This document shows positions 1,007 to 33,718 of a stretch of 34,647 bases of DNA, piece after piece. How positions within the stretch are numbered: the stretch's first letter is position 1; the number at the start of each line of letters is the position of its first letter. A program made the position numbers and the translations under genes. The stretch spans positions 62,001 through 96,647 of the forward strand of contig NW_024704953.1 in assembly GCF_018977255.1 (NCBI RefSeq), in the 5' to 3' direction. The notes below the pieces were generated by a model that did no database searches, was not told where the DNA came from, and saw nothing but the letters and a program-made list of their open reading frames with translations. The DNA is from Callorhinchus milii. Its lineage: Eukaryota.

Positions 1007-1045
1007 GGTTATTGTACGAGGCTTCCTATGATGTGTATCACTGTG
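1007..1045 (-). promoter_or_regulatory. 23-RSS of supporting V-delta 1
   Basis: CACAGTG (1039-1045), 23-bp spacer, ACAATAACC (1007-1015). Confidence 0.95.
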
Positions 1046-1347
1046 GTGCAGACTGAGTGCACAGTGGTACATAGCGGAGTCTGTCAGCCGCAGGTCGGCG
1101 ATGGTTAAAACGCTGATTTTCTTGGCAGTGTCAAGAGAAGCAGAAATATGACCTCCAGAGGGGTTCCCTCCCACTCCTGAGGGTTTTGTGTGGAGCAGAT
1201 ATTTGAGTTCCTCGCCAGGGGACTGACGGTACCAGGAGACGTTGAAATCCTTTCCACAGATTCCTGAATATTGGCAATGTAAATTTATCCTCTCACCAGA
1301 AAAAGCACTTTGCTCAGGCGGTGACTGGGAAACTGTTTCACGCGATC
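1046..1347 (-). CDS. Leaderless supporting TCR-delta V segment 1 (NAR-TCR membrane-proximal V)
   Basis: Acceptor CCTGCAG| at 1348, phase 1; (R)SRETVSQSPPEQSAFSGERINLHCQYSGICGKDFNVSWYRQ...DSAMYHCALSLH; canonical C/W/C plus extra CDR1 Cys; no leader exon seen before J1; followed by 23-RSS. Confidence 0.9.
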
Positions 1348-1564
1348 CTGCAGGATGCAAATTACAGGTTACTTAGAATTATGGCATCATGGAACCTAAC
1401 CCGACCACAACCCTTTCAGGCAGTGCATTGCAGACTGTAACAACTTTTTTGCAAAAAAAAAATCCTCATTATCTCACCTCTGGACCTTTTACCACTTAAC
1501 ATCAATTTGGGTTCACTGGTTACTGAAACGCTGACCAATGAGAATATTTTATATTGATCCACTC

Positions 1565-1760
1565 TATCACATCACCTCACAAATATGAACACTTCAATCA
1601 GATCTCCACTCAACCTTCGGTCTCTAAGCAGAACACTACCAGAGACCCGAGTATCTTCATTTGAATGAAGCCTCTCGCCCTGGGCATCATTCAAGAAAAT
1701 CCCCTTCGAACCCTGTCCACGACCATAGCACTTTCCCCAACGTGTCCGTGAAAACCTTTA
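1565..1760 (-). mobile_element. Old CR1-like LINE 3' fragment (homologous copies about 17570-17730 and 30620-30830)
   Basis: Similar to the better-preserved CR1 fragment at 24620-24830 (cacaattt...ctctaagga...ccctcatccctgg); heavily diverged. Confidence 0.4.
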
Positions 1761-1894
1761 TACTAAATGTAAGAATCACTGTTCAATCAACAGTAGAAAG
1801 AGACGAGGAATGGATAAATTTAGAGTGCTGCTCTGCACCGTCCAACCTGTGGCTATTGCTGTGACACCATTGTTATGATCGCTCATCAATGCAA

Positions 1895-2128
1895 CGTTTA
1901 ATTAAGCTTTTTTTATCTTATGCTTAGCCTATGTTCATGGGAATGTTTAGCAGAGAATCAGGTGTCAGATTGTGCCGTTAAATCAGTGGGTTTACAGTTG
2001 AGGCAAATGGAAATTTCCTGCTGTAAATGGCGTTACTTTATCACCGCTGCTGGAGGAGGTTTGTCTCTGACTTGTTGCCAATATCAGTTTCTCTCTCAGT
2101 CTGTGAGCTGCTCATTGAAGCAAAGTAC
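1895..2128. promoter_or_regulatory. Conserved non-coding element in the J to supporting-V intron, copy 1
   Basis: About 230 bp, by eye roughly 80% identical to 17889-18182 and 30958-31250, with a retained E-box (1959-1964). Function inferred only. Confidence 0.45.
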
Positions 2129-2500
2129 TCTCTCTCTCTATCTATCTATCTATCGCTCTCTCTCTCTCTCTCTGTCTGTTTTTTTTGTTTGTTTGTCTCT
2201 TTCTTTCTTACTTTCTGTCATNNNNNNNNNNNNNNNNNNNNNNNNNNNNNNNNNNNNNNNNNNNNNNNNNNNNNNNNNNNNNNNNNNNNNNNNNNNNNNN
2301 NNNNNNNNNNNNNNNNNNNNNNNNNNNNNNNNNNNNNNNNNNNNNNNNNNNNNNNNNNNNNNNNNNNNNNNNNNNNNNNNNNNNNNNNNNNNNNNNNNNN
2401 NNNNNNNNNNNNNNNNNNNNNNNNNNNNNNNNNNNNNTATCTCTTCCACCCTTTCGTTCTCTCTAAATCGCTTTTCTTTCTTTCTTCTACTTTCATATCT
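2128..2500. repeat. CT/TCTA/TTTC-rich microsatellite containing an assembly gap (N 2222-2437)
   Basis: Directly visible simple repeats flanking 216 N. Confidence 0.95.
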
Positions 2501-2635
2501 TACATATTCAGAAATCGCTGCGTATCAGCAAGCTTGATATTAACTTTCTTGTAGGTTAAGAATAAAACACTCAGCATATATGGGAACAGGAAAGTGGGTT
2601 AACTTTTCACATTGAATCGGAACTGGGGGACAAAG

Positions 2636-3136
2636 AAACAACAACAACAAGATTACATTTATAGAGCGCCGTTCACGTCGTGAGGAAGTCCCAAGGCGCT
2701 GGACCAAGTTGGGTCAGGACCCGAGCGGAGGAGAAATGGTCAGGGTTAGTGGAGGGAAGGGAGGGAGCGAGGAGGGGGGAAATGGTCAGGGTGAGGCGAG
2801 GGAATGGAGGCAGCGAGGAGGGGTTAGAGAGTCGAGAGGGGAGATGAAGGTACGGTCAAAGAGAAAGGTCTTGAGACCGGCCTTGAAGGAGGAAAGGGAG
2901 GAGGCGGCGAAGGCACTGGGGATGGAGTTCCAGAGCCTCGGGGCTGAGAGGCTGAAGGCCCGACCACCGATGGTAGGGCGGTTGGGGTGGGGGATGTGGA
3001 GCAGACCGGAGCCAGAGGAACGGAGCGTACGGGCAGTTATGTCGGGGGACAGTAGGTTGGAGAAGTAGAAGGGAGCAAGGCCGTGAATGGCCTTGTAGGC
3101 GAGGATGAGGATCTTGAATTCGATCCTCTGGGGCAC
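2636..3136 (-). mobile_element. 5'-truncated L2-clade LINE (ORF2 C-terminus, 3' UTR, (TTG)n tail), unique to unit A
   Basis: Peptide QRIEFKILILAYKAIHGLAP...RTLRSS...GGRAFSLSAPRLWNSIP...FKAGLKTFLF is typical of the L2 ORF2 end; tail AAGCGCCTTGGGACTTCC...GCGCTCTATAAATG plus TTG repeats. Confidence 0.85.
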
Positions 3137-3567
3137 GGGAGAAGTTTATATCATATTACACATTGGAGCCAGTTCAGTTCGAAAGAAACCCCACTTCCCG
3201 GGAGAATTGAGGAGGATAGGGATTTTTATCATTTCCTTTGACCCAAGATATATTGCTTCAAGTAAACACCGGAATTTACAGTCAACAATTCCTCTGGGTA
3301 TATCTCTTTGGAACCAATATCCAGACAAAGTTAGTGACTTTACAAAACATTAAATAAAAGCTGGTCATTTGAGGAACAGGCTTCATATTCGGAGCTCAGT
3401 AATCCTTTCTGCAACACAGAATGTATTTTTCTTCATAATTGCTAATGTCGGTTGTAGGAAAGGCTCAGTTGTAAATAATTGGGAGCTGTCGTTCAGAATA
3501 ATACACTTTGCAAATTGACTTGAATAAAGTTTCATTTTAGTACGAAAGAAGTTTTTTTCTCACTTAC

Positions 3568-3623
3568 TTTCAGTTACAGTTAAATTGGTTCCTGATCCAT
3601 CTTCTGTGTATTCATCGCAATAC
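3568..3623 (-). CDS. NAR-TCR J segment 1 (YCDEYTEDGSGTNLTVTE)
   Basis: GSGT-x-L-TV G-strand motif like IgNAR J (DGAGT); phase-1 donor GTAAGT at 3562-3567; RSS immediately 5'. Confidence 0.9.
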
Positions 3624-3662
3624 CACAGTAACACAACTCTCATCCTACACAGTGCAAAACCT
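3624..3662 (+). promoter_or_regulatory. 23-RSS 5' of J1
   Basis: CACAGTA, 23-bp spacer, GCAAAACCT, read on plus strand facing D1. Confidence 0.8.
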
Positions 3663-3974: not shown

Positions 3975-4046
3975 GGTATTTGTGCTGATGTTTTACACTG
4001 TGACCATTCCAAACACAGCACAGTATTTAATGTCAACACAAAAACC
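3975..4046 (-). other. NAR-TCR D segment 1 (coding 4003-4018, CTGTGTTTGGAATGGT) flanked by two 12-RSS
   Basis: Plus strand: ggtatttgt-12-cactgtg [16 nt] cacagta-12-acaaaaacc. All three frames open (LCLEW / CVWNG / VFGM). Confidence 0.92.
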
Positions 4047-4361: not shown

Positions 4362-4399
4362 CCTTTTTGTATTGCTGGAAGCCCAGATACAGCATTGTG
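4362..4399 (-). promoter_or_regulatory. RSS of NAR-V1, 22-bp spacer
   Basis: CACAATG, 22 bp, ACAAAAAGG. Confidence 0.88.
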
Positions 4400-4705
4400 A
4401 ATCTCCACCAAAGCTAAAAGCGTGCCAGCAATATCGAGCCTTACAGTAATAGTCAGCGCTGTCTTCAACTTGCAAATCATTAATTTCCAGAGAAGAGGAC
4501 CACGATTCCATGTCTGTCTTGACAACAAACCGTCCTTCACGAGGGATGCGTTTCCAATCTCTTTCATTTGGAAACCGCCTATAAAACTCCATACTTTGGA
4601 ATGCGCTTTGATAACTTGCTGAGAAGACACAGTTGATGGTTAAAGACTCGCATTCTTCTTTTCTAACAGGAGACGGTGTCTGCGTTACTTTAGCGCTGAA
4701 AACAT
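4400..4705 (-). CDS. IgNAR-like V exon of NAR-TCR cassette 1, intact
   Basis: Acceptor TTTCAG|; VFS-AKVTQTPSPVRKEECESLTINCVFSASYQSAFQSMEFYRRFPNERDWKRIPREGRFVVKTDMESWSSSLEINDLQVEDSADYYCKARYCWHAFSFGGD. 61 aa between the canonical Cys versus 70-72 in the TCR Vs counted here, i.e. the C'/C'' deletion of VNAR; matches VNAR motifs QTP, ESLTINC, GR(Y/F), SL(R/E)INDL(T/Q)VEDS. Confidence 0.9.
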
Positions 4706-5092: not shown

Positions 5093-5135
5093 ATTGTAAG
5101 AAGAGGAAGGAGAAGGAGACACAGAGGAGAGACAT
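5093..5135 (-). CDS. Leader exon of NAR-V1 (MSLLCVSFSFLFLQ)
   Basis: ATG, 43 nt hydrophobic, phase-1 donor GTAAGT; splices in frame to 4705; homologous leaders at 20505 and 33676. Confidence 0.9.
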
Positions 5136-5800: not shown

Positions 5801-5869
5801 ACCGATATGGTAATGCACTGTATTATTATACAAGCAATATTATTAATTCCTGACTTGGCCTGTCTGTCT

Positions 5870-6045
5870 CTATTTCCGTGTGTCTGTGTATCTGTATGTG
5901 TGTGTGTGTGTCTGTCTGTCTGTCTGTCTCTGGCTGTCCGTCTGTGTGTGTTTCCCTCTAACTCTCCCTCTCTTTCTCTCTCTCTCTCTCCAGCTGTCTT
6001 TCTTTGAATCGTTAGTAAAGCTTCCTTGCTGCACACACACACATA
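5870..6045. repeat. (GT)n/(CTGT)n/(CT)n/(CA)n microsatellite cluster (homologs 21090-21140, 34460-34647)
   Basis: Directly visible. Confidence 0.9.
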
Positions 6046-7646: not shown

Positions 7647-7685
7647 GGTTTGTGTACAGGGAAGTCATTGACTTGCAGCACTGTG
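7647..7685 (-). promoter_or_regulatory. 23-RSS of conventional V 'a'
   Basis: CACAGTG, 23 bp, ACACAAACC. Confidence 0.92.
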
Positions 7686-8592
7686 CATCTGATCTTAAGC
7701 CACAATAGTACGTGGCAGATTCAGTGACAATGACACTGAGAATGATTAATGTGGTTTGTTCCTGATTCTTGTCCAGATGTGAAGTGAAACGGCCTTTGGC
7801 GTAATCTGCAGTGTTGTCTACCCCATTGGTATGTCTGTAGAGAATGTATTGGGGAGCCAGACCTGGGTGATGTCTGTACCAGTACAGAGCAGCATAGGTC
7901 GAGCTGGTGGTATATGAGCAGCTCAGACTCACTGTGTCTCCCTCTTGTTTGCTCAGCCACGCTGTCTGCTGTCTGACTGAATCTCCCAGCACCACATCTG
8001 CAACCAGAGGAAAGGATCAACTTGAAACATGGCTCCATATTACTTCTGTAGTCCAGTGGACTCGCCTCGAAAGGGATGGGACTCGGGTTTTTTTCCCTGG
8101 CAGGACAGGGATTAACTTTGGGAAGTTTCCTATCTATACATACGCCTCTGTTTACCGAGCAGTAAGTAGGAACCCAGTTGTTAATCGATTGGCAAAATAA
8201 AGTGTGGTCACTCAATCCACGACTGTCTGTGGGGAAAATGCTGTGCGAATTTGGATGCCACTTTTCGCCCACTAAATACGGAATCACTATACCATCAAGT
8301 ACATACTTTTAAGTGGTTCGAGACACCTGCAAAAGGTGAAAAGACGCTATATCGAATGCAAGGAATTATAATAATATTATTATTATTATCATTATTATTA
8401 AAAATATTATGCATCCGCAACTAATAATTTGACTGCCAACCCACATCGGGAGACAAAACCAACAATGTTAAACACCTTGAGACTTCCTCCAGATGAGACA
8501 GTCTCTATATAAATATTAATCTGTATTATATGCTACACAGCCTCACCTGACAAAAAGCTCAACAGGAGAAGGTAATCCGTGAACAGTCGCAC
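7686..8592 (-). CDS. Conventional TCR alpha/delta V 'a' (leader 8547-8592, V exon 7686-7997); leader starts GTG not ATG, so ORF or possible pseudogene
   Basis: V exon DSVRQQ...SLSCSYTTSSTYAALYWYRHHPG...ESATYYCGLRSD is open; leader VRLFTDYLLLLSFLS|GTGAGG is homologous to MRLFAVCLVLGTFMS of V 'b'; in-frame TGA just upstream, no ATG. Confidence 0.82.
8043..8400 (+). mobile_element. Full-length degenerate SINE in the V 'a' leader intron
   Basis: tRNA-like head (tgtagtccagtgg), body, tail gtgaaaagacgctatatcgaatgcaagga plus (ATT)n. Confidence 0.7.
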
Positions 8593-9721: not shown

Positions 9722-9760
9722 AGTTCTTGTACGAGTCTTGCGTTGCAGTCTATCACTGTG
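9722..9760 (-). promoter_or_regulatory. 23-RSS of conventional V 'b'
   Basis: CACAGTG, 23 bp, ACAAGAACT. Confidence 0.92.
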
Positions 9761-10749
9761 GTGAGACTTAAGGCACAGTAATACACAGCGCTGTCAGACA
9801 CCACCAGCTCTGAGATGGATAAACTGGTGGATGAATTGGATGTCTGTAGCTGAGCAGAGAAACGATTTCCAAATCCTATTCCTTTTACTTGATCGTCATT
9901 CCCAGAATATCTCCAAATTATAAACTCCGGCTGTTTGTCTGGGTAATGTCGGTACCAAAAGAGATAGTAATAGCTTTCAGTCGTGGAATAAGTACATTGC
10001 AAAATCGCAATTTCTCCTTCTTTCTTCACCATCGTGGCAGCTTTCTGACTGACGGAATCACCAACACAGAGTTCTGTAATAAACATGGAACAGCACGAAC
10101 ATATTATTCACTCAGTGCCTGAGTTATTTTTGGAGTGCCTTTGAACGTCCTCCCGACGAGAAATGCGCTATGCATAAGTACTATGTTAACAATGAAATTA
10201 TACTATTCAATGTATTTTATATAAAGCATTATCACATTGTTGGGAGGTCTTGATACGCTTCACAGAATTTGCTGTCGAGTTAAGTGCTGTGTATTTTGGG
10301 GGGAGAAACCCGATAGCCAATTTCGCACAGCACTGCCTAAAATAAAACAGTGCTGGAATGTATTACCAAATAGTTATTTCTTAAAAAAGATTACTTTCCT
10401 TGGAAAATGGATCAGACAAACCACTAAACACGTTTTTGAATTGAGTTATTATTTGAAAAGTTATTACCTCCGGGTTGCAAATCAAGGGGGATTCTACTTA
10501 CTGCTGTTTAAACAGAGGCATGTGTGTGCTTGAGCAGAGAGGAAACAAGCTTATGTATTCATCCTGCCCGGGAAACGAATCCCTGTCATCTCGCTTGCGA
10601 GGCGAGAACTCTAACCCCTGAACTAAAGTTTTCTCTCCACCAGTTGTTGTTGAAACGCAGTTGACAATCAGCATCGACATGAATTAGTTCAACGCGGCCT
10701 CACCTGACATGAAGGTTCCCAGCACAAGACAGACAGCAAACAGCCTCAT
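9761..10749 (-). CDS. Conventional TCR alpha/delta V 'b' (leader 10704-10749, V exon 9761-10073), intact
   Basis: MRLFAVCLVLGTFMS|ELCVGDSVSQKAATMVKKEGEIAILQCTYSTTESYYYLFWYRHYPDKQPEF...SDSAVYYCALSL; GT/AG phase-1 intron; 23-RSS. Confidence 0.93.
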
Positions 10750-11396: not shown

Positions 11397-11435
11397 AGTT
11401 TTTGAACGAGTCTCTGACTGGTACCCATCACTGTG
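11397..11435 (-). promoter_or_regulatory. 23-RSS of conventional V 'c'
   Basis: CACAGTG, 23 bp, TCAAAAACT. Confidence 0.9.
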
Positions 11436-12213
11436 TGGTTGGAGAGCACAGTAATACACAGCGCTGTCAGACAGCTGCAGCAGGGAGATGGTTAAACTGC
11501 TAAATTTTGTCGAGATTTGGAGCTCAATAGAGAACCGCTTTTTAGCAAAATCTGCTTTATATGTACTACCACCGGAATGCTGTTGAAGCACATACTGTGG
11601 TTGTGTTTCTTGTTTTTCTCGATACCATTTTAAATAGTAGTTGCTCAGAGACGTATCATAATGACATTCCATGGTCACACTTCCTCCTTCTTTCCCAATC
11701 ACTGAAGCCACCTTCTGTGTCACAGAGTCTCCCAGGGTCAGGCCTGAAAGACAAGAGCGTGGAGTCCTGTAGCTCAGTGGTTAGAGCGCTCGCCTCGCAA
11801 GTGAGAGGACCCGAATTCGATTCCCGGTCAGGACAGAATCTTAGGCAAATTTCTTTAACCACACACCTCTAGTTACACAACACGAAATAGAAAACTGTGT
11901 GTTACTCAATCAGCCGAATAGTTCTTTCTTAGCACACACACCTACGATTAGTCAACCGTAACTAGAAAACTATTTGTGAGTCAATTAGCCGATTGCTTTT
12001 CGTGGATAAAAATCCCTTCAAAAAGAATAGAAAAGCCTTTTAAAGTGTGTTCAGTAAATCCTTGAGTATTTAGGGGACCTTTTTTGCATGAAATTAGCTA
12101 CCATTCAGTTAAATGATTTTAAAAAATAATTGAAAGATGTATAATTGTTATAATAAATTACCTATTAAGATGGCAGCGAGAACCAGACACAAACTGGCTC
12201 CCTCCAACCCCAT
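11436..12213 (-). CDS. Conventional TCR alpha/delta V 'c' (leader 12162-12213, V exon 11436-11743), intact
   Basis: MGLEGASLCLVLAAILI|GLTLGDSVTQKVASVIGKEGGSVTMECHYDTSLSNYYLKWYREKQ...SDSAVYYCALQP; donor GTAATT, acceptor TTTCAG. Confidence 0.9.
11764..11860 (+). mobile_element. SINE head with tRNA-Ala(CGC)-like cloverleaf, in the V 'c' intron
   Basis: GTCCTGTAGCTCAGTGGTTAGAGCGCTCGCCTCGCAAGTGAGAGGACCCGAATTCGATTCCCGGTCAGGAC; A and B boxes; T-stem mismatched; continues into SINE body. Confidence 0.75.
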
Positions 12214-13374: not shown

Positions 13375-13568
13375 GTAATAATAATCCCTCCAAAATAAAA
13401 CAATAATAAATTGGTCATTTTCAATCTACGACTGTTTGTGGGACATTGCTGTGCGCAATTGGCTGCCGCGTTCGCCCACAAATATACAGTCAATTCACTT
13501 TACAGTCTATACTGCGAAGCGCTTTGGGACGTCCTCCCGACGTGAAAAGCGCTATATCAAATGCAAGG

Positions 13569-15398: not shown

Positions 15399-15863
15399 GG
15401 TTTATGCACAGTGATGTAGTCTGACAGTAATACTGTGTGTGTGATGGCACAGTAATGTTTGACCATGTCAGATAGCCTCGTGGAGCACAAATGCAGTGGA
15501 TATCTTCTTGCCCGTGTACATATTTGGCGTTGAACTTTGCGTTGTAAATCCACTAATGAATATATCCCCATTAGAATCACGTCTCCTTGTGTACAGAGGA
15601 GGTTCCCTTGGATACTGACGGTACCAGAATATTAAAACATTGGGGGAATCAGCAGAGGAGGTGCAGATCCGGGTTACAGTCTGGCCTTCAATAACAGACA
15701 CTTCCATCTCTGATGGTTCAATACTGACTCCATTCCCTGTCCCTATAGCCAGAGAAAACATGTTTACCAGTGTCACACAAAGCCCAGAGGTAAATCCACA
15801 TATTGTTTTAAGAGTGAGGGAGAAAGACTTAAACATCATGCCCAATAACAGTGAATGTAACAT
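15399..15863 (-). pseudogene. TCR V pseudogene 'd' (RSS 15399-15437, V exon 15438-15742, dead leader about 15830-15863)
   Basis: C, FWYRQYP and HYC retained; 2-nt deletion versus the paralog gives TGA at 15468-15470; leader MLHSLLLGMM has donor GTAAGT mutated to TTAAGT; RSS CACAGTA-23-GCATAAACC. Confidence 0.85.
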
Positions 15864-16839: not shown

Positions 16840-16878
16840 GGTTATTGTACGAGGTTTCCTATGATGTGTACCACTGTG
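16840..16878 (-). promoter_or_regulatory. 23-RSS of supporting V-delta 2
   Basis: CACAGTG, 23 bp, ACAATAACC. Confidence 0.95.
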
Positions 16879-17180
16879 GTGCAGACTGAGTGCACAGTGA
16901 TACATAGCGGAGTCTGTCAGCCGCAGGTCGGCGATGGTTAAAACGCTGATATTCTTGGCAGTGTCAAGAGAAGCAGAAATGTGACCTCCGGTGGGATTTC
17001 CTCCCTCTCCTGAGGGTTTTCCGTGGAGCAGGTATCTCAGTTCCTCGCCAGGGGACTGACGGTACCAGGAGACGCTGAAATCCTCTCCACTGCATGCTGT
17101 AACTTTGCAAAGTAATGTAATATTCTCACCAGCGAAAGACATGTGTTCAGGCGGTGACTGGGAAACAGCTTTACTCGATC
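16879..17180 (-). CDS. Leaderless supporting TCR-delta V segment 2
   Basis: Acceptor CCCCGCAG|; (R)SSKAVSQSPPEHMSFAGENITLLCKVTACSGEDFSVSWYRQ...DSAMYHCALSLH; CDR1 Cys; no leader seen in the gap-free intron to J2. Confidence 0.92.
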
Positions 17181-18994: not shown

Positions 18995-19086
18995 TTCTTG
19001 TTATAGTTACTGCGGTTCCTGATCCGTCAATGGTTCTTTCATAACAACACAGTGACACAATTCTCCTTCTTCAAAGTACAAAAACT
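18995..19086 (-). CDS. NAR-TCR J segment 2 (18995-19047; CYERTIDGSGTAVTITR) with 23-RSS (19048-19086)
   Basis: Donor GTGAGT phase 1; plus-strand CACAGTG-23-ACAAAAACT. Confidence 0.93.
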
Positions 19087-19410: not shown

Positions 19411-19484
19411 AGTATTTGTACTTATGTTTTCCAATGTGGCCTCTCCAGTTATCCACCACGGCATTTAATGTCAGCACAAAACGC
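19411..19484 (-). other. NAR-TCR D segment 2 (coding 19439-19456, GTGGATAACTGGAGAGGC) with 12/12 RSS
   Basis: Plus strand: agtatttgt-12-caatgtg [18 nt] cacggca-12-acaaaacgc; homologous to the D1 flanks. Confidence 0.85.
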
Positions 19485-19811: not shown

Positions 19812-19849
19812 GCATTTTGTATTGCCGGAAGCCCAGATGCAACACTGTG
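19812..19849 (-). promoter_or_regulatory. RSS of NAR-V2, 22-bp spacer
   Basis: CACAGTG, 22 bp, ACAAAATGC. Confidence 0.88.
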
Positions 19850-20547
19850 CTTTACAAGTAATCGTATCGAGCTTTACAGTAGTAGACAGCACTGTCTTCA
19901 ACCTGCAAATCATTAATTTTCAGGGAAGTCGACTTTGATCCCTTTTCTATTTTTAGAACAAACCGTTCTTCACGAGGGATGGGCCTCCAATGTCTGTCAT
20001 TTGGAAACCATCTATAAAATACGATGCTCTTGAGAGTGTCGTAATACCCAGCTTCAAAGTCACAGGTGATGGTCAAAGAGTGGCATTCTTCTCTCCTCAG
20101 AGGGGATGGCGTCTGATTTACCGACCGACTGAAAACATCTGAATTTTTAACATAATATGACATTAGTTTAATAGAGTTCATGTCTTCACCGCATCAATGA
20201 TAATTTATTGTAAAATGCAATCAAGATAAATAATACAGTTTTCATATATTTCAACTAATTAATTATAGTGCGTCATGGAATATAACTATCATGATATAAA
20301 TAATCTGAATTGGCTGCTAAGTTTCGCCCCCAAAAGAAAGCCAATTCACTTTGCAATATATTCCGTGATTTGCTTTGAGACGACTCATCCACGTGATAAG
20401 GCGTTATATTAAATGCAAGAATTATTGTTATTTTTATTTCGCAGACTGTATTGATTATATTCACTCATGCTAGGTCTTGTTGGGTAATGCAAAAGAACAC
20501 TTACATTGTAAGAAGAGTAAGGAGATAGAGATATAGAGGAGAGACAT
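19850..20547 (-). CDS. NAR-TCR V2 (leader 20505-20547 MSLLYISISLLFLQ; V exon 19850-20138)
   Basis: RSVNQTPSPLRREECHSLTITCDFEAGYYDTLKSIVFYRWFPNDRHWRPIPREERFVLKIEKGSKSTSLKINDLQVEDSAVYYCKARYDYL*; open except a TAA at 19852-19854 in the trimmable tail. Confidence 0.9.
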
Positions 20548-25151: not shown

Positions 25152-25190
25152 AGAATTTGTACGAGGCTGTAACTGATTTGCATCACTGTG
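25152..25190 (-). promoter_or_regulatory. 23-RSS of conventional V 'e'
   Basis: CACAGTG, 23 bp, ACAAATTCT. Confidence 0.9.
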
Positions 25191-26099
25191 AGAAGAGAGG
25201 GAGTGATAGCACAGATATACATAGAGCTGTCAGACACCTGCAGCTCAGAGATGGATAATCTGGTTACAGATTGGGAACTGTCAAGCTGAGAAGAGAATCG
25301 ATTTCCAATTCCAGCTCCTTTGGTTTCCTTGTTATTGTATGAGAATCTCCAAACCATAAACTCTGGTTGTTTGACTGGATATTGGCGGAACCAGAACAGA
25401 ATGAAAGCGCTCTCATTCGTGAAATAGATACAATCAAAAGTCACAGCATCTCCTTCTTTCTTCAGCAGCGTGGCAGCTTTCTGACTGACAGAGTCCTCTC
25501 CACAGAGTTCTGTAATAAACATGCAAGAGCACGACAATATATTATTTACTGCTGACCTGATTTATTTTTCCAGCGCCTTTGGATCTCCATCGGACCCAAA
25601 AGCCATTCCGAACATATCATTTGGTAATGCTGAGATAATAATACTCAGTGAATTTTCGTAGTGCATTATCTTGTCGTCCAGACGTTTGAATCTGCTTCGC
25701 TGAGTATACTGTGAAGTGTATCTTCTGTATTTTCATGGGCGAAACGCGGCAGCTGTTTTAGCACAGGAGTGTTCCACAAACAATCGTGAAATGAGTGAAC
25801 AAATTATTATTTGGTTTTCATTGCTACCCCTGCGTTCAGCAACAGGATAACTATTGCTCGTGGGTAAAGAGAGGCATGTCGTGGAGTAACGAAAATTGTC
25901 CAAGATTTCACCCTGCCCCGTAATCAAACCAAGATTCTCTCTCTTGTGTGGTGAGCTCTCTATCCTCTAAGTTAAACTACTCCCTCCACCAATTGCTGTA
26001 GAAATTTATTTGATAATCAACAGCAACTCTGAATTAGCTCAGCAGGACCTCACCTGACATGAAGGTTCCCAGCACAAGACAGACAGCAAACAGCCTCAT
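25191..26099 (-). CDS. Conventional TCR alpha/delta V 'e', paralog of V 'b' (leader 26054-26099, V exon 25191-25509), intact
   Basis: MRLFAVCLVLGTFMS|ELCGEDSVSQKAATLLKKEGDAVTFDCIYFTNESAFILFWFRQYPVKQPEF...SDSSMYICAITPSL. Confidence 0.92.
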
Positions 26100-27699: not shown

Positions 27700-27880
27700 A
27701 TAATAATGTGTCGAGATTCCCAGTGGCTTACATCACCTGAGGCTCAGAGTACAGTAACACTCCCCGCTGCCAGTCACTGTGAGGCCACAGACACTGAAGC
27801 CCCCCCCCCCCCCCCCCCCCCACACACTGAATCCTCGCCTCACAATTATGTTGATCTGTTCTGAGCCCCAAAGGGCAATT
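27700..27880 (-). pseudogene. TCR V relic (paralog of 14300-14460) with an expanded C22 run at 27800-27821
   Basis: LTVTGSGECYCTLSL; decayed RSS. Confidence 0.55.
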
Positions 27881-28540
27881 TGTCACTATAATAGTTCACA
27901 TTGCAACAATGAATTGAGCCAATATTGCCACTGGCAATTGTATATTCTTGTATTTACGTACTATTTACCCAGCAGTATATAGGAATCCGTTGTTATTCGA
28001 TTGGCGAATCACTTTCCGAGTTAATAATCCCTCCGAAATGTGTTGGTCACTGCTATCCGCCAATCGACTAACAGATGAGTTACAAGTTACTGCTATTTAA
28101 ACAGAGGTGTGCGGAATAAGGAAACTTGCCTATCGTTGCAGCTTAGCTAAATCCGTAAATGAATAGCCGCAAGTTGGCGAGAACCAAGGCTTGACAACCC
28201 CCACATTATGCTTTGGGGAAACTGTTGCTGTATAACCAGCTAATGCCACATAGTTTCCCGTTTACATTGCCAATTCGTAGCAACTTCTTTCCACAGTATA
28301 TTTTGCGAAGCCGTTTGAGACATCTCGAAGTCGCGAAAAGGCGCTACATTAAATGTAAGATTCACTATTAATTCGTTCACTCTTTCCCTACACGAACTGT
28401 TCCAACACATTTTGGTTGTGGTTGGCAATCAGCCGCGTGTTTCCTCTGAGAGACACAGGAGCTAAGTAAAAAATGTGAATTAGGTCAACTGTCAGCGTTA
28501 ACATCTGTGCTGAGATGAGACCCTTTCTCTCCTCTTTGGG

Positions 28541-29003
28541 GGTTTATGCACAGTGATGTAGTCTGACAGTAACACTGTGTGTGTGATGGTACAGTAATGT
28601 TTGACCATGTCAGGTAGAGCCACGGGGAACACAAATAGAGTGGATCTCTTCCTGCCCATGTACAGATTTGGCTTTAAATTTTGCGTTGCAAATTCAGCAA
28701 TGAATACATCCCCCTCAGAATCATGTCTCCTTGTGTACAGAGGAGGTTCGCTTGGATACTGACGGTACCAGAATATTAAAACATTGGTGCAATCAGCAGA
28801 GAAGGTGCAGCTCAGGGTTACAGTCTGTACTTCAGTAACAGACATTTCCACCTCTGATGGTTCAACACTGACTCCATCTCCTGTCCCTATAGCCAGAGAA
28901 AACATGTTTATCAGTGTCATACAAAGCCCGGAGCTAAATCCACTTATTTTAAGGGTTAGGGAGAAAGACTTAACATCATGCACAATAAAAGTGAATGTAA
29001 CAT
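28541..29003 (-). pseudogene. TCR V 'f', paralog of pseudo-V 'd' (RSS 28541-28579, V exon 28580-28886 open but degenerate, leader donor broken)
   Basis: GTGDGVSVEPSEVEMSVTEVQTVTLSCTFSADCTNVLIFWYRQYP...DMVKHYCTITH; RSS CACAGTG-23-GCATAAACC; leader MLHSLLLCMM followed by TTAAGT, no phase-1 GT. Confidence 0.75.
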
Positions 29004-29954
29004 CGCAAAGGAATTAACAGCGCAAATGTGCTGCACTGTTATCCCACAAAGCACATAGCAACTCAAATTGGCAATCAAAATATGTGAAGAGCTTTAAGTT
29101 ATACTCTATACCGACAAACATATAAGGACTGATGTTCCTTCATCTCCAGGATTTATTTTCTATGCTGGGTTGTCAAAAAATCAGCCTTGTGCTCCAACGT
29201 AGGTCAAATAATACCCATTGATTATCTTGACTTCATCTACTGCAAGTAACATAATAGCAATGATTGCATTTGATGGAGTGATTGTACATTTTCATCTTTA
29301 GCGCACAACAAAATTATTATTTGCCAATTATTTTTGCACCGGTCATTACCCCAGAAAATAATTTGACAGTCGACCAACAAACGCGTTCCCACGTACTGCA
29401 AGAAAAACACAGGCGCGAGTATGGAGTAAGGAAACTTGACCAACCTTTCGCACTGCCTGGGATTCGAACCCATGTCCTCTCACTAATGATTAAGGAACAG
29501 TTCTCCACTGACATTGTAATATCAATTTAAAACAACTCAGTGTGAAAACTTATGTTACAGCATTTTAAGTGCCCGCTGCTAACAAACACAAAATTGGATT
29601 AGGCATTTTTACTGCAAAATATACAGTCAATTCAATTTAAAGAATAATCTGAGAAGCGCTTTGAGAAGTCTCAATGACGCGCTGCGACAAAAAGTCAAAT
29701 GGAAAGATTATTTTATTTGTTATTTTCTTTTTATTGCTGTTATTATTAACATGCGAAACTTCCGAAAACATTTATCACAATCTTCTCTCTGTTGGTGAAG
29801 AACATCTCAACTATACAGTTAGAAAAGTATCTCATATTTTAGCTGACTTGACAAATCTCAACAAGATGTGAGCTACGGTGGCATTTGGCAGAAGGTTTGT
29901 TACACTCTCTGTCGCTAACACATTGTGTTGTTTCCCAGCTTTGGCTGTGATGAG

Positions 29955-29993
29955 GGTTATTGTACGAGGCTTCCTATGATGTGTATCACTGTG
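29955..29993 (-). promoter_or_regulatory. 23-RSS of supporting V-delta 3
   Basis: CACAGTG, 23 bp, ACAATAACC; identical to the RSS of supporting V1. Confidence 0.95.
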
Positions 29994-30295
29994 GTGCAGA
30001 CTGAGTGCACAGTGATACATAGCGGAGTCTGTCAGCCGCAGGTCGGCGATGGTTAAAACGCTGATTTTCTTGGCAGTGTCAAGAGAAGCAGAAATATGAC
30101 CTCCAGTGGGGTTTCCTCCCTCTCCTGAGGGTTTTCTGTGGAGCAGGTATTTCAGTTCCTCGCCAGGGGACTGACGGTACCAGGAGACGCTGAAATCCTG
30201 TCCACAGAATCCTGAATATTGGCAATGTAAATTTATCCTCTCACCAGTGAAAGCCGCTTGTTCCGGCGGTGACTGAGAAACTGTATGACTCGAAC
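29994..30295 (-). CDS. Leaderless supporting TCR-delta V segment 3
   Basis: Acceptor TACCGCAG|; (R)SSHTVSQSPPEQAAFTGERINLHCQYSGFCGQDFSVSWYRQ...DSAMYHCALSLH. Confidence 0.92.
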
Positions 30296-30957
30296 CTGCG
30301 GTATGAAAATTATAGTTAACTAGAATCATGGTACAACTGAATCTTGCAAAACAGAAGGAGGCCATTCGCCCCATTGTGCCTATGCTCAATGAACCTCCTT
30401 TGTAAGGAGCGATCCAATTGAATCCCACTCCCCCGCTGAAGTTTATTATCGAAACTGTTTCCACCACCCATTCAGACATTGCATTGCATGCAATAACACA
30501 TTTCGGTGGAAATTAATTCATCTCACCGCTGGTTCTTTTACTAATTCTTAAATTACTGTTTCGTGGTTACTGACCAACTGGACTGGGCAAACAGCTTCTT
30601 CTGATCTGCTACAAAAAAGTACTCTCACAATTTTGAATGCTTTCAATAAATCACCACTAAATGTTCGCTGCTCTTAGGAGAATATTTTCAGAATTGGTTT
30701 CTTCATGTACATGAATCCCTTCTTCCCTGGTAGCACTTTGGTAAATCTTTCTTCCTCCCTGCCCAAGGCCTGGAGATCCATCCTTTTGTGCCCGCGAAAG
30801 GTTTTATGCCAAATGTAAGGATTCTTGTAATAACAATGGGAGAGCGCAGTTGAATGCCATAAAGTACAGAGCACTTCCAAGCGAGGCAAACTTTAGTGCA
30901 GACACAAACCGTGTAGCTATTTTTATGGCAGAATAGATAAAATATAATAAATCAGCC

Positions 30958-31250
30958 GTTTAACTAAGCTTTGTTTTTCTTATCTTATGTTTGTTTGCTG
31001 TAGAGGATTGTCCACATTGAGGCTTTGGGTGTCTTTGATCATGGGAATGTTTGGCAGAGAATCAGTTGGCAGTTTGTAGCGTTAAATCAGAGGGTTTAAA
31101 GTTGAGACAAATGGAAATTTTCACTGCTGTAAATGTCGTTACTTTAACATCGCCGCTGGAGAAGCTTTAGTCTCTGGCTTGTTGTCAATATCAGTTGCTC
31201 TGAGTCTGTGAACATCTCAATTCAGTTTCACAAGTGCCAGAAGCAAAGTG
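30958..31250. promoter_or_regulatory. Conserved non-coding intron element, copy 3
   Basis: See copy 1; E-box CAGTTG at 31063-31068. Confidence 0.45.
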
Positions 31251-31459
31251 GTTTTTGTCTCTCCCTCTCTTTCTCTCTCTATTTCTTTCTCACCGTTTTA
31301 TATTTTAATCTTTTCATCATTCTGTCGTTCTTTCAATGAATTGCTTTCTTTCAGGAGCAGTCTCATTGCACTGTTGTGTGAAGTAAGGTGCAGTCTGTCT
31401 TTCTCTGTCTTTCTGTTTCTTTATTTCCTTGTTGCTTTCTGACTTTCTTGCTCCCGCAC

Positions 31460-31740
31460 AACCACCCCACCCACGCCACACTGTTTGCTCCATCTTCAAC
31501 TGCAGGGCCTGAATTCTGTGCCAACCTGACAATGTGTCTGCTTCAAAAAAATCACACAATCTTCCGACTAGGGACGCATTCTGCCAAACTTGCTATGGAA
31601 AACTTTGTCTGGCAATCTAACCCGCTGCTTGTCCGGCTTGGAATGTCCGACCTTATGTTGCACATTTCCTTGCAGGAGTATGGAAGCTGATTGGTTTGGG
31701 ACACTGCCCCCAGTGACTGGTCTGCCAGCCCAACTCATGT
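31460..31740 (-). mobile_element. Possible RTE-like LINE C-terminal fragment, unique to unit C
   Basis: Minus frames WAGRPV...ILLQGNVQHKVG... and ...WHRIQALQ...VWRG weakly recall the RTE end (RWAGH...LLYG...W...A.DR..WR). Weak. Confidence 0.3.
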
Positions 31741-32164
31741 AACATTGGAGCGAATTCATCTCCGAGGATTGCGCCATCTCCTTTCGCTCTGGAGGACAGA
31801 GGAGAATAGGGACAAGATTTATATCCGACACAGGCTCCATAAATTGATTACCCGAATTTAAACGAAATTGGTCATCTGGGCATTGTCCTTTGCAACTACT
31901 GTCCAGAGAATATCAGCGACTTTGCGTAAAACAAAAAGAAAAGCAAGTCAATTGGGAACAAAAGCTTCGTAGTGGAATCTGATTATTTTTTTCCACATCA
32001 AAAACATATAGCTTTTTCACGATTGGTCAAGTGGATTGCTTCAATAGAACAGTTGTAAATAGCAAAGTTGCAGATCATTGGGAGCAACTTGTTCGAATAA
32101 TGCGTTTTAGTAATTCATCTAAATAAAGTTTTGTTTTAAATCAATAGAAGTTATTCTCACTCAC

Positions 32165-32260
32165 GTTTAGTTACTGTTACTTTGGTTCCTGATCCATCTT
32201 TCGTTTCAGTTCTCCATTGTACCACAGTCATTCAGCTCTCACTCACAATGTCCAAAAACA
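32165..32260 (-). CDS. NAR-TCR J segment 3 (32165-32222; VQWRTETKDGSGTKVTVTK) with 22-RSS (32223-32260)
   Basis: Donor GTGAGT phase 1; plus-strand CACAGTC-22-CCAAAAACA. Confidence 0.88.
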
Positions 32261-32562
32261 TCATAACTTTAACACAGGCATAAAAACAACTAAATGCTGA
32301 CAAATTGATCATTAATTCGTATGTCTCCTCCGCTGTCACTTCTCCGTACTCTTCTTTTGCCAAGTCATGTTTACTTTCAATAATATTTCCACAGAAACAC
32401 ATAAAAGTGCCTGGCAAAGAGAAACTCTTTCTTTAAATAACTCCCGAAATTTCTGGTTGAAATAATTAACTTGGGATCCAAAATTCGACAAATTGAACAA
32501 AATGGAAACAGGAGCACTAATCAGTATTCACATCCAATGTTTTACGATGAAAATAGTGAAAC

Positions 32563-32635
32563 TGTATTTGTACTTATGTATACCAACGTGGCTTCCGAAT
32601 ATACCGCCACGGTATCTAATGTCAATGCAAAATAC
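32563..32635 (-). other. NAR-TCR D segment 3 (coding 32591-32607, GCGGTATATTCGGAAGC) with 12/12 RSS
   Basis: Plus strand: tgtatttgt-12-caacgtg [17 nt] cacggta-12-gcaaaatac; heptamers non-consensus. Confidence 0.8.
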
Positions 32636-32958
32636 CTGGTTTGCGAAACAATTTAAATTATTTCTTCCTTTCAAATGATCAATCATACACATACAGTGTA
32701 ACATTTTATGAATATTTTCCAAGTGGAACTTGACAATCCACCTGTCTGTTATGATTAAATAGTTATCTATTTATAAACGAAGCGAACTACCAATGTCCAA
32801 TCATACACACTCTCTTTTGCTAACTATTAATAAATAATGATTGCTTCTCGACCGAAGTGTTATTGAACGTCATAGCTAATCACACATGAATCAGGAAGGT
32901 GCTTTAAGTCAAATGAAAAATTCACATTCCCTGTTTTTTTCCTGTGAGTTGGTGAGAG

Positions 32959-32996
32959 GGTTTCTGTCTTGTCGGAAGCCCAGATACAGCATTGTG
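32959..32996 (-). promoter_or_regulatory. RSS of NAR-V3, 22-bp spacer
   Basis: CACAATG, 22 bp, ACAGAAACC. Confidence 0.88.
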
Positions 32997-33718
32997 GAAT
33001 ACCAATACTCGTATCGAGCTCTACAATAATAATCAGCGCTGTCTTCAACCTGCAATTCATTAATTTCTAGAGAAGACGTCTTCGATTGCTTGTCTGTCTT
33101 TACAAGAAACCGACCACCACGAGGGATGGGCTTCCAATGTTCCTCGTTTCGAAAATGCCTAAAATAGTCCATGCTGTTGAAACGGTCATCATATCCCGCT
33201 TTGTAGACACATGTGATGGTGAAGACTCGCATTCTTGTTTCCTAACAGACGATGGCGTCTGCTTTACTGATGCACTGTAAACATCTGAAAATTATACATA
33301 ACATGACATTAGTTAAAAAGATCTTCAACACTGACCAGTTCTCATAAAATTGCATCCCTTCCTTAGCTTGTCTTAGTTGATATCAATTGATATAATCTAA
33401 CCATGACGTATAATATAGGCACAATATCAATTCACAAAAATAATTTTATAAATGATTAAATCAGGCTATCATAATACGTTTTACACCAAACGGCTGCCAA
33501 GTTTCGACCACAAAAAATATACTTAATTCACTTTACAATATATAACTTGAAGCGCGTTGTGGCGGCTCTTCGACGTCGATATGCGATATATCAAATTCAA
33601 GGATTATTATTATTAAGAATTTATCGCATATTGTAATGATGACATCCACTGGTGCTGTGTAATGTAAACACTTACATTGTAGGAAGAGGAAGGAGATGGA
33701 TACGCAGATGAGAGACAT
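32997..33718 (-). pseudogene. NAR-TCR V3 (leader 33676-33718 MSLICVSISFLFLQ; V exon 32997-33284) with a 1-nt frameshift at about 33222 (pseudogene or sequencing error)
   Basis: ASVKQTPSSVRKQECES / FTITCVYKAGYDDRFNSMDYFRHFRNEEHWKPIPRGGRFLVKTDKQSKTSSLEINELQVEDSADYYCRARYEYWY; GAG TCT TC ACC versus GAG TCT TTA ACC in V1. Confidence 0.85.

What the first reader, a model, noticed from the sequence alone, without database searches (positions are those of the whole stretch)
1007..33718. Three complete doubly-rearranging NAR-TCR cassettes embedded among ordinary TCR V genes
Seen: three times, in the same order and spacing, leader > VNAR-like V > 22-RSS > (about 315-330 bp) 12-D-12 > (about 300-325 bp) 23/22-RSS-J > phase-1 intron > leaderless V-delta > 23-RSS. 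Established: NAR-TCR of sharks (Criscitiello, Saltis and Flajnik 2006, PNAS) is a TCR-delta chain with two V domains, each made by its own V(D)J event. Inference: each cassette encodes an antibody-like VNAR domain stacked on a supporting V-delta that joins D-delta/J-delta outside the window. The D, J and leader parts are invisible in the ORF track and would be missed by automated annotation.
Basis: partly seen in the sequence, partly recalled or inferred. Interest (0 to 1): 0.8.

Follow-up and report, generated by a model that had tools for sequence, protein, structure and literature searches.

The report
Germline NAR-TCR gene cassettes, chimaera

Summary
All three cassettes lie on the minus strand and share one layout. 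A 43-nt leader exon is followed by a VNAR-like V exon with a 22-bp-spacer RSS. A single D follows, flanked by 12-RSSs. Then comes a J with a 22/23-RSS and a GTRAGT donor, a 1.8-2.2 kb phase-1 intron, and a 302-nt leaderless V exon with a 23-RSS.

- **RSS enrichment:** 17 strict RSS sites were found against 0.48 expected from shuffles, and 16 of them sit on segment borders.
- **Family placement:** the N-terminal Vs group with IgNAR and elasmobranch NAR-TCR Vs (support 100/99). The second Vs group with elasmobranch supporting Vs (98/94).
- **Diagnostic residues:** all published ones are present.
- **Source:** closest proteins are Callorhinchus milii, up to 97% identical, a species where NAR-TcR was reported in 2007 and 2014.

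"Three complete" is too strong. Cassette A is intact. Cassette B has an in-frame TAA 2 nt before the V heptamer. Cassette C has a 1-nt deletion in FR1 that frameshifts the NAR V as assembled.

The N gap (2222-2437) lies inside cassette A's J-to-supporting-V intron, within CT-rich low-complexity sequence more than 870 nt from either splice site. Reading frame is therefore not at stake. Continuity is supported by colinearity with B and C but is not proven.

Verdict: correct identification of an already known system.

The parts
5093..5135 (-). Cassette A: NAR-V leader exon (MSLLCVSFSFLFLQ + 1 nt, donor GTAAGT)
4400..4705 (-). Cassette A: VNAR-like V exon, intact ORF. Carries a 17-nt 3' extension relative to B and C that encodes an extra Cys.
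4362..4399 (-). Cassette A: V RSS, CACAATG / 22-nt spacer / ACAAAAAGG
3975..4046 (-). Cassette A: 12-RSS, D (4018-4003, CTGTGTTTGGAATGGT), 12-RSS
3568..3661 (-). Cassette A: 22-RSS (3661-3624) plus J (3623-3568, YCDEYTEDGSGTNLTVTE + 1 nt, donor GTAAGT)
1348..3567 (-). Cassette A: phase-1 intron of 2220 nt as assembled. Contains the N gap 2222-2437 inside CT-rich low complexity, and a repeat insertion at about 2700-3140 that B and C lack.
1007..1347 (-). Cassette A: leaderless supporting V exon (1347-1046, 302 nt, CDR1 Cys) plus 23-RSS (1045-1007)
20505..20547 (-). Cassette B: NAR-V leader exon
19812..20138 (-). Cassette B: VNAR-like V exon (20138-19850) with in-frame TAA at 19854-19852, plus 22-RSS (19849-19812)
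19411..19484 (-). Cassette B: 12-RSS, D (19456-19439), 12-RSS
18995..19086 (-). Cassette B: 23-RSS plus J (19047-18995, ...DGSGTAVTITR + 1 nt, donor GTGAGT)
16840..17180 (-). Cassette B: leaderless supporting V exon (17180-16879) plus 23-RSS. The preceding intron 18994-17181 is 1814 nt.
33676..33718 (-). Cassette C: NAR-V leader exon
32959..33284 (-). Cassette C: VNAR-like V exon (33284-32997), frameshifted by a 1-nt deletion at about 33222-33223, plus 22-RSS (32996-32959)
32563..32635 (-). Cassette C: 12-RSS, D (32607-32591), 12-RSS
32165..32260 (-). Cassette C: 22-RSS plus J (32222-32165, ...DGSGTKVTVTK + 1 nt, donor GTGAGT)
29955..30295 (-). Cassette C: leaderless supporting V exon (30295-29994) plus 23-RSS. 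The preceding intron 32164-30296 is 1869 nt.
7647..7992 (-). Context: ordinary V gene V1 (V exon about 7986-7686, 23-RSS heptamer at 7685)
9722..10068 (-). Context: ordinary TCR alpha/delta-like V gene V2 (23-RSS heptamer at 9760; candidate leader 10749-10704)
11397..11738 (-). Context: ordinary V gene V3 (23-RSS heptamer at 11435; candidate leader 12213-12162)
15399..15743 (-). Context: V4, a V pseudogene with a frameshift and stop in FR3, RSS heptamer at 15437
25152..25500 (-). Context: ordinary V gene V5, a paralogue of V2. RSS is CACAGTG / 23-nt spacer / ACAAATTCT, heptamer at 25190.
28541..28887 (-). Context: V6, a paralogue of V4 with an open frame but atypical FR3, RSS heptamer at 28579

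Best explanation
These are three tandemly duplicated germline NAR-TCR units in the TCR alpha/delta V region of a holocephalan, most likely Callorhinchus milii or a very close relative. The mechanism below is inferred from the cis-elements and from the published nurse-shark system.

1. In a thymocyte, RAG joins the NAR V (22-bp-spacer RSS) to the single D (12-RSS), and the D (12-RSS) to the J (22/23-RSS). The D is obligatory because V and J both carry long spacers. The joins delete two intervals of about 0.3 kb each and produce a VDJ exon.
2. Independently, the leaderless supporting V (23-RSS) joins by deletion to D-delta/J-delta. These should lie downstream on the minus strand, that is below coordinate 1.
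3. Transcription starts at the conserved promoter upstream of the NAR leader.
4. Splicing then joins leader to NAR VDJ (phase 1), NAR J to supporting V (phase 1), and J-delta to C-delta.
5. The product is a three-domain TCR-delta chain. Its membrane-distal VNAR-like domain is thought to be unpaired and to bind antigen like a single-domain antibody. It may be tied to the supporting V by the a-b-loop Cys and the CDR1 Cys.

As assembled, cassette A is functional. Cassette B is usable only when junctional trimming removes its terminal TAA. Cassette C cannot make an in-frame NAR domain.
For: Shown in the sequence:
- All leaders, exons, RSSs, donors, acceptors and phases, three times over.
- RSS enrichment of 17 sites against 0.48 expected, located on segment borders.
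- Colinear paralogy of the three cassettes.
- A roughly 200-nt block upstream of each ATG that is largely conserved across the three copies; the aligned ~330-nt region including the leader averages 85% column identity.
- No conserved leader-like exon in the J-to-supporting-V intron, while the same scan recovers the true NAR leaders.

Homology:
- The NAR V's best solved-structure matches are VNARs.
- The tree places the NAR Vs with IgNAR and elasmobranch NAR-TCR N-terminal Vs at 100/99, and the second Vs with elasmobranch supporting Vs at 98/94.
- dN/dS of 0.28-0.45 shows purifying selection on all three NAR Vs.

Cross-species evidence:
- Hemiscyllium ocellatum LOC132808260 has the same leader (43 nt), V, RSS, D, J, 2.7-kb intron, supporting V and 23-RSS layout.
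- More than 60 two-V gene models from about 20 shark, ray and skate species matched. Two Mustelus models continue into a J and a TCR constant/transmembrane region.

Species: a C. milii protein is 97% identical over 143 aa, including translated non-coding flank.

Literature:
- NAR-TcR has two V domains made by separate VDJ rearrangements, and it is present in C. milii with the same diagnostic residues (PMC1845163; PMC3964593).
- Also PMC5931798 and PMC12227049.
Against: - No transcript, coding joint or signal joint from this locus was available, so rearrangement and the J-to-supporting-V splice are inferred here.
- D-delta, J-delta and C-delta are not in the window.
- Cassette C is frameshifted and cassette B ends in a stop.
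- V-RSS spacers are 22 rather than 23. Several heptamers and nonamers deviate, for example the 5' D heptamers of B and C (CACGGCA, CACGGTA), so efficiency may be low.
- The assembly gap in cassette A's intron leaves a formal possibility that A's V-D-J part and its supporting V were joined by scaffolding.
- The elasmobranch two-V gene models read through the V heptamer. They are germline-based predictions, not rearranged cDNAs.
- The primary paper (Criscitiello et al. 2006) could not be read here.
Confidence: 0.92

Rival explanations
1. The cassettes are mostly decaying relics. The architecture is NAR-TCR, but few or none of these three copies contribute to the expressed repertoire.
For: - Cassette C's NAR V is frameshifted and cassette B's V ends in an in-frame TAA.
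- One neighbouring ordinary V (V4) is also a pseudogene.
- Some RSS heptamers and nonamers are degenerate.
- Cassette A's intron carries a repeat insertion and an assembly gap.
Against: - Cassette A is fully open, with good RSSs and splice sites.
- dN/dS of 0.28-0.45 indicates past purifying selection on all three NAR Vs, including the 75 codons downstream of C's frameshift, which stay open.
- C's defect is a single base in a T-run and could be recent or an assembly error.
- B's stop lies within the last 5 nt, where junctional trimming normally acts (established knowledge of V(D)J joining).
- All three supporting Vs, Ds and Js are intact.
Confidence: 0.2
2. They are IgNAR-type immunoglobulin clusters, or fragments of them, that happen to sit beside TCR V genes rather than forming part of a TCR chain.
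For: - The N-terminal V is closest to VNAR domains.
- The RSS pattern is IgH-like: V long spacer, D 12/12, J long spacer.
Against: - No constant-region exon follows any J. Each J is followed by a V exon in matching splice phase.
- There is a single D.
- The Vs carry the NAR-TCR markers, a-b-loop Cys and no Trp in 'WYRK', which the IgNAR sequences lack.
- IgNAR was not found in the C. milii genome (PMC3964593).
- The second V clusters with elasmobranch supporting Vs.
Confidence: 0.02
3. The supporting Vs also, or instead, work as ordinary stand-alone V-delta genes. A cryptic in-exon start or a distant leader would then make the NAR module optional.
For: - In cassette C an ATG-initiated ORF (MGRMASFCFARFSCTMILVNYNF...) runs from the intron into the supporting V.
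- A C. milii database model uses exactly that start (P0002).
- Another model (P0005) joins an ordinary-V-type leader (MRLFAVCLV...) to a supporting-type V.
Against: - The upstream ORF is absent from A and B, where stops intervene, and is not conserved.
- Conservation among cassettes ends 17-37 nt upstream of the acceptor.
- Those database models are automated read-throughs that also translate the RSS.
- Lack of a leader is a published hallmark of NAR-TCR supporting Vs (PMC1845163).
Confidence: 0.05
4. The threefold repetition is an assembly artefact, with one cassette over-expanded or haplotypes placed in tandem.
For: An assembly gap exists in cassette A, and the region is repeat-rich.
Against: - The copies differ by 10-28% in nucleotide sequence. 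They have different D and J sequences, different intron lengths and private lesions.
- That is far beyond allelic or assembly-error divergence.
Confidence: 0.01

Closest known systems
NAR-TcR (NAR-TCR) of nurse shark, Ginglymostoma cirratum (Criscitiello, Saltis and Flajnik 2006, PNAS 103:5036; cited through PMC1845163, PMC5931798, PMC12227049)
   Same: - A TCR-delta chain with two V domains, each made by its own V(D)J event.
- N-terminal V related to IgNAR V, with its own leader.
- Dedicated leaderless supporting V-delta.
- Cys in the NAR V a-b loop and in the supporting V's CDR1, and no Trp in 'WYRK'.
All of these sequence features are met here.
   Different: - The lineage differs (holocephalan versus elasmobranch), with about 45% amino-acid identity to elasmobranch two-V models.
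- Expression is not shown for this locus.
- I could not read the primary paper, so germline details such as spacer lengths and D number cannot be compared point by point.
Elephant shark (Callorhinchus milii) NAR-TcRV and associated TcR-delta V genes (Venkatesh et al. 2007, PMC1845163; 2014, PMC3964593)
   Same: - Most likely the same species and gene family. C. milii database proteins are 80-97% identical to the supporting Vs here.
- The same diagnostic residues are described.
   Different: Those papers, as far as I could read them, describe the V peptides and the presence of the family. This window adds the resolved D and J segments, RSSs, splice phases, tandem arrangement among ordinary Vs, and the lesions in copies B and C.
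IgNAR heavy-chain clusters of elasmobranchs
   Same: - Homologous single-domain V (clade 100/99).
- IgH-like RSS pattern.
   Different: - IgNAR V-D-J is followed by constant exons and uses several D segments (my knowledge). Here there is one D, and the J splices to another V exon.
- The IgNAR V sequences keep the Trp of WYRK and lack the a-b-loop Cys.
- IgNAR was not found in C. milii (PMC3964593).
TCR-mu of marsupials and monotremes
   Same: A three-domain TCR chain with an antibody-like, presumably unpaired N-terminal V on a supporting V (PMC3457774). The supporting V here weakly matches the opossum TCR-mu chain structure 7k0z.
   Different: - Regarded as convergent rather than related by descent (PMC3457774).
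- Its V is VH-related, not NAR-related.
- Its supporting V is germline-joined or lacks a D.
- It sits at a separate locus.

Membership tests
NAR-TCR (doubly rearranging TCR-delta) | The N-terminal V belongs to the IgNAR/NAR-TCR V lineage | tested here: met
   The best solved-structure matches are VNAR domains, E 8.5e-15 and below. It sits in a 100/99-supported clade with IgNAR V and elasmobranch NAR-TCR N-terminal V, separate from the ordinary Vs.
NAR-TCR (doubly rearranging TCR-delta) | The NAR V has a typical leader peptide on its own exon | tested here: met
   43-nt leader exons (MSLL.../MSLI...) with GTAAGT donors and phase-1 junctions give ...FLQYVFS|AKVTQTP.
NAR-TCR (doubly rearranging TCR-delta) | Cys in the a-b loop and no Trp in the 'WYRK' motif of the NAR V (PMC1845163) | tested here: met
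   A has KEECESLTINC and EFYRRF. B has REECHSLTITC and VFYRWF. C has QECES(F)TITC and DYFRHF. The IgNAR sequences have KETGESLTINC and WYRK.
NAR-TCR (doubly rearranging TCR-delta) | The NAR V has its own D and J segments, with RSSs that allow an independent VDJ event | tested here: met
   V 22-RSS, 12-D-12 and 22/23-RSS-J occur in all three cassettes. RSS count is 17 against 0.48 expected by chance.
NAR-TCR (doubly rearranging TCR-delta) | The NAR J is spliced to a dedicated supporting V-delta exon that lacks a leader | tested here: met
   Sequence level only. J donors are GTAAGT or GTGAGT, phase 1. The supporting V has a CAG acceptor, phase 1, with an open frame across the junction. There is no conserved leader-like exon in the intron. 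Actual splicing was not observed.
NAR-TCR (doubly rearranging TCR-delta) | The supporting V carries a conserved Cys in CDR1 (PMC1845163) and belongs to the supporting-V lineage | tested here: met
   CQYSGICGKDF, CKVTACSGEDF and CQYSGFCGQDF. The clade with elasmobranch supporting Vs has 98/94 support.
NAR-TCR (doubly rearranging TCR-delta) | The supporting V rearranges to D-delta/J-delta and is expressed with C-delta | not testable with these tools
   A consensus 23-RSS is present on each supporting V, but D-delta, J-delta and C-delta lie outside the window and no transcripts were available. Two Mustelus gene models link the two Vs to a J and a TCR C/TM region, but they are predictions from another species.
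IgNAR immunoglobulin cluster | V-D-J followed by IgNAR constant exons, with no second V exon | tested here: not met
   Each J is followed after 1.8-2.2 kb by a V exon in matching phase. tblastn and ORF scans find only V-type Ig domains in the window.
TCR-mu (mammalian) | VH-related N-terminal V, and a supporting V that is germline-joined or lacks a D, at a separate TRM locus | tested here: not met
   The N-terminal V is NAR-type, not VH-type. The supporting V is an unrearranged segment with a 23-RSS.

The most novel reading that the evidence does not exclude
The two halves of each cassette may have separate histories.

- Synonymous divergence is 0.57-0.86 between the NAR V exons but only 0.11-0.18 between the supporting V exons of the same cassettes.
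- Non-coding V-D-J DNA is about 25% diverged, against 10-20% around the supporting V.
- One reading is that the supporting-V scaffold is homogenised by gene conversion or was duplicated more recently, while the antigen-binding module diversifies.
- All segments share one orientation, so an upstream NAR V could join a downstream cassette's D or J, which would add combinatorial diversity.
- Cassette A's germline 17-nt V extension, which encodes an extra Cys paired with a Cys-encoding J, could template a disulphide-braced CDR3.
Probability: 0.25. Interest if true: 0.4.

Novelty: already known. Interest (0 to 1): 0.25.

Why it matters
NAR-TCR is a well-known oddity of cartilaginous-fish immunity: a T-cell receptor carrying an antibody-like single-domain binder made by a second V(D)J event. 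It bears on whether the single-domain V began in a TCR or in an immunoglobulin (PMC3964593, PMC12227049).

This window adds nothing conceptually new. Its practical value is as a base-resolved germline map for a holocephalan, covering leaders, single Ds, Js, RSSs, splice phases, tandem duplication and pseudogene status. That map could:
- correct public gene models, which currently truncate or misname these genes;
- provide germline references for repertoire sequencing.

Tried and rejected
- **Primary paper:** Criscitiello et al. 2006 (by DOI and as PMC1458790) and Ott et al. 2021 (PMC7909615) are not held. I relied on papers that cite them.
- **Supplement:** the supplement of Venkatesh 2014 is not held.
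- **Second assembly for cassette C:** I looked up the locus of the C. milii protein P0002 to see whether C's frameshift appears in another assembly. No gene with that product is on record, so real deletion and assembly error cannot be separated.
- **Two-V gene models as transcript evidence:** rejected as cDNA evidence. They translate through the V heptamer (NTVM, THSD), so they are germline-based predictions.
- **Classifying the supporting V and V3:** the PDB search gave mixed VH and TCR matches inflated by multi-domain chains. The tree was more informative.
- **Bacterial promoter/terminator scan:** found nothing, as expected for a vertebrate locus.
- **Upper flank of the gap:** 2438-2720 has no significant match in the B or C introns. 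Continuity rests on the lower flank, the more distal upper block and the shared microsatellite.
- **Germline-joined V-D in cassette A:** considered because of the long V 3' end, and rejected. A's D is intact with both RSSs, and the extension is a 17-nt insertion in an otherwise aligned V end.

Full report
**What is there**

All V-type reading frames in the window lie on the minus strand. The minus strand shows the same series of elements three times, and scripts fixed the borders.

Each cassette opens with a 43-nt leader exon: MSLLCVSFSFLFLQ, MSLLYISISLLFLQ or MSLICVSISFLFLQ, plus one base, with donor GTAAGT. A 366-391 nt intron follows. Then come:
- a V exon beginning ...YVFS|AKVTQTP, followed by a heptamer, a 22-nt spacer and a nonamer;
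- after 315-327 bp, a 16-18 nt D flanked on both sides by 12-bp-spacer RSSs;
- after 302-324 bp, a 22- or 23-bp-spacer RSS and a J encoding ...DGSGTxxTxTx plus one base, with donor GTAAGT or GTGAGT;
- a 1.8-2.2 kb intron;
- a 302-nt V exon entered through a CAG acceptor in the matching phase;
- a consensus 23-RSS (CACAGTG, 23 nt, ACAATAACC).

Its end (33718) is the ATG of cassette C's leader.

**Is it more than chance?**

A strict RSS scan required CAC, at least 6 of 7 heptamer bases, at least 7 of 9 nonamer bases, and a spacer of 12, 22 or 23. It finds 17 sites, against 0.48 +/- 0.61 (maximum 3) in 100 dinucleotide-preserving shuffles. Sixteen of the 17 sit exactly on a V end, a D flank or a J start.

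The cassettes are colinear paralogues. Nucleotide identity is 72-76% over the V-D-J part, 78-90% around the leader and promoter, and 85-90% over the second V. tblastn finds exactly three NAR-type Vs, three supporting-type Vs and three Js, plus six ordinary Vs, all on the same strand.

**The assembly gap**

The only N run is 2222-2437. It lies inside cassette A's J-to-supporting-V intron, 1130 nt from the donor and 874 nt from the acceptor. No exon abuts it, and reading frame across it does not matter.

Both flanks are CT-rich, (CTTT)n-like sequence. At the paralogous place in cassette B there is a (CTTTCTTT)n array at 18182-18355.

Homologous blocks keep their order and orientation on both sides:
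- above the gap, A 3385-3138 matches B 18814-18577;
- below the gap, A 2114-1935 matches B 18150-17968 and C 31211-31039.

The simplest reading is a gap inside an intronic microsatellite. Continuity is likely but not proven, because the 283 bp directly above the gap have no match in B or C.

**'Complete' is only partly true**

- Cassette A: the spliced leader and V reads open to the heptamer.
- Cassette B: the frame ends ...YYCKARYDYL-TAA-AG|CACAGTG. An in-frame stop lies within the last five bases of the V, at 19854-19852.
- Cassette C: one T of a T-run is missing relative to A and B (GAGTCTT-CACC versus GAGTCTTTAACC, at about 33222-33223). The leader frame hits a stop, and the Ig-like frame is reached only after the shift.

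The 75 codons after the shift in C stay open. dN/dS among the three NAR Vs is 0.28-0.45. The lesion is therefore recent or an assembly error. I could not check another assembly.

All three Ds, Js and supporting Vs are intact.

**What the domains are**

All of these are V-set Ig domains. The best solved-structure matches of the first V are shark VNAR domains, E 8.5e-15 downward.

In a maximum-likelihood tree:
- the three first Vs fall in a 100/99-supported clade with two IgNAR Vs and the N-terminal Vs of five elasmobranch two-V proteins;
- the three second Vs fall in a 98/94-supported clade with the second Vs of those same proteins;
- the ordinary Vs of the window fall outside both clades.

The residues published as diagnostic (PMC1845163) are all present:
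- a Cys in the a-b loop of the NAR V (KEECESLTINC);
- loss of the Trp of 'WYRK' (FYRRF, FYRWF, YFRHF);
- no leader on the associated V-delta;
- a Cys in the supporting V's CDR1 (SGICGKDF, TACSGEDF, SGFCGQDF).

A scan for leader-like exons recovers the three true NAR leaders. It finds nothing conserved in the three J-to-supporting-V introns, and nothing at all in B.

**Source and relatives**

A conceptual leader-V-J-supporting-V product finds Callorhinchus milii proteins at 80-87% identity. It also finds a Hemiscyllium ocellatum model covering both domains.

One C. milii entry (P0002) is 97% identical over 143 residues to cassette C's supporting V, including translated intron and RSS. The window is therefore from C. 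milii or a very close relative.

Those C. milii entries contain only the second V and translate the RSS (HHSDTHHRKPRTITLIT).

The H. ocellatum locus has the same layout:
- a 43-nt leader;
- a V with an RSS;
- a D with the core TTTGGAA, flanked by a 12-bp-spacer RSS on its 3' side and an RSS-like signal on its 5' side (read by eye; its spacer was not counted);
- a 23-RSS J encoding DGTGT;
- a 2.7-kb intron;
- a supporting V with a 23-RSS.

A profile search then returned more than 60 two-V models from sharks, rays and skates. Most are labelled 'uncharacterized' or misnamed. Two Mustelus models continue into a J and a TCR constant and transmembrane region. These models read through the V heptamer, so they are germline predictions and not cDNAs.

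**Mechanism**

The sequence shows the cis-elements and their compatibility. The remaining steps are inferred from them.
- V and J of the NAR module both carry long spacers and the D carries two 12-RSSs.
- The supporting V's 23-RSS fits a D-delta 5' 12-RSS. This rests on established knowledge of TCR-delta loci.
- All segments share one orientation, so joining is deletional. D-delta, J-delta and C-delta should lie beyond coordinate 1.
- Transcription from the conserved promoter block, followed by three splices, would give leader, NAR VDJ, supporting VDJ and C-delta.

This matches what the literature describes for NAR-TcR (PMC1845163, PMC5931798, PMC12227049, PMC3457774), including the model of an unpaired, antibody-like distal domain.

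**Comparison and novelty**

This is the NAR-TCR system, and every family-defining feature testable in sequence is met.
- It is not an IgNAR cluster. There are no C exons, there is one D, and each J is followed by a V exon.
- It is not TCR-mu, which has a VH-type V, a different supporting V, and is regarded as convergent (PMC3457774).

NAR-TcR genes were reported in C. milii in 2007 and 2014. [quoted passage not shown] The finding is therefore a correct recognition of a known system.

What the window adds is detail:
- D, J and RSS anatomy and splice phases;
- a roughly 13-kb tandem repeat unit made of one ordinary V plus one cassette;
- the lesions in B and C;
- a hint that the V-D-J and supporting-V modules have diverged at different rates.

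**Verdict**

- Novelty: already known.
- Interest is low to moderate, mainly as an annotation resource.

Noticed in passing
window 13376-20695 versus 26895-33862; also 1-202 versus 15870-16071 and 29010-29211: There is a tandem duplication with an offset of about 13.1-13.5 kb. The unit is one V4/V6-type V gene plus one NAR-TCR cassette. The first 202 bases of the window match the region upstream of V4 and V6, so another such V probably lies just beyond coordinate 1.
   Followed up: partly
window 15438-15737 (V4) and 28580-28881 (V6), minus strand: V4 has a frameshift and stop in FR3 and is a pseudogene. Its paralogue V6 keeps an open frame but has an atypical FR3 (…PDMVKHYC) and scores only weakly against the V-set model.
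   Followed up: partly
window 11764-11835 (+) and 26791-26862 (+): Both ARAGORN and Rfam call two tRNA-Ala-like sequences here. The first lies inside the leader intron of ordinary V gene V3. Both sit in repeated DNA, so they are probably heads of tRNA-derived SINEs rather than tRNA genes.
   Followed up: no
window about 2700-3140: Cassette A's J-to-supporting-V intron has an insertion of about 440 bp that B and C lack. It carries a long ORF-like stretch typical of a fish retroposon tail and a 46-nt x2 tandem repeat (2733-2823). It accounts for most of A's extra intron length.
   Followed up: no
window 5860-5949, 21094-21163, 34463-34647: A (CTGT)n/(TCTG)n microsatellite sits 550-750 nt upstream of each NAR leader, so it is part of the duplicated unit.
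   Followed up: no
NAR V exons (4400-4705, 19850-20138, 32997-33284) versus supporting V exons (1046-1347, 16879-17180, 29994-30295): Divergence is mosaic within the same cassettes. dS is 0.57-0.86 between NAR Vs but 0.11-0.18 between supporting Vs. This may reflect gene conversion or a younger duplication of the supporting module. The site numbers are small, so it is only a lead.
   Followed up: partly
window 4400-4440 (V of cassette A), 3568-3623 (J A), 18995-19047 (J B): Cassette A's V has a 17-nt 3' insertion relative to B and C, giving a germline ...YYCKARYCWHAFSFGGD with an extra Cys. J(A) and J(B) also encode a Cys, as do two frames of D(A). This recalls the extra CDR3 cysteines of some IgNAR types.
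   Followed up: no
public proteins P0002-P0010 (C. milii) and P0013-P0078 (elasmobranchs): Database models of these genes are systematically wrong or unnamed. C. milii models hold one V and translate the RSS. NCBI two-V models carry names such as 'Down syndrome cell adhesion molecule-like', 'immunoglobulin gamma-1 heavy chain-like' and 'T cell receptor alpha chain MC.7.G5-like'.
   Followed up: partly
L002 16997-19357 (Hemiscyllium ocellatum): A 7TM receptor gene (7tm_1 / Srw hits) lies 2.5 kb downstream of the shark NAR-TCR cassette. This recalls the olfactory-receptor genes that border the mammalian TCR alpha/delta locus, a point I recall from my own knowledge.
   Followed up: no
L002 14250-14300 (Hemiscyllium ocellatum LOC132808260): The supporting V of this shark copy has Tyr in place of the second canonical Cys (…AVYYYALS). 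Its J-to-V junction needs a weaker donor to stay in frame, so this copy may itself be defective.
   Followed up: no
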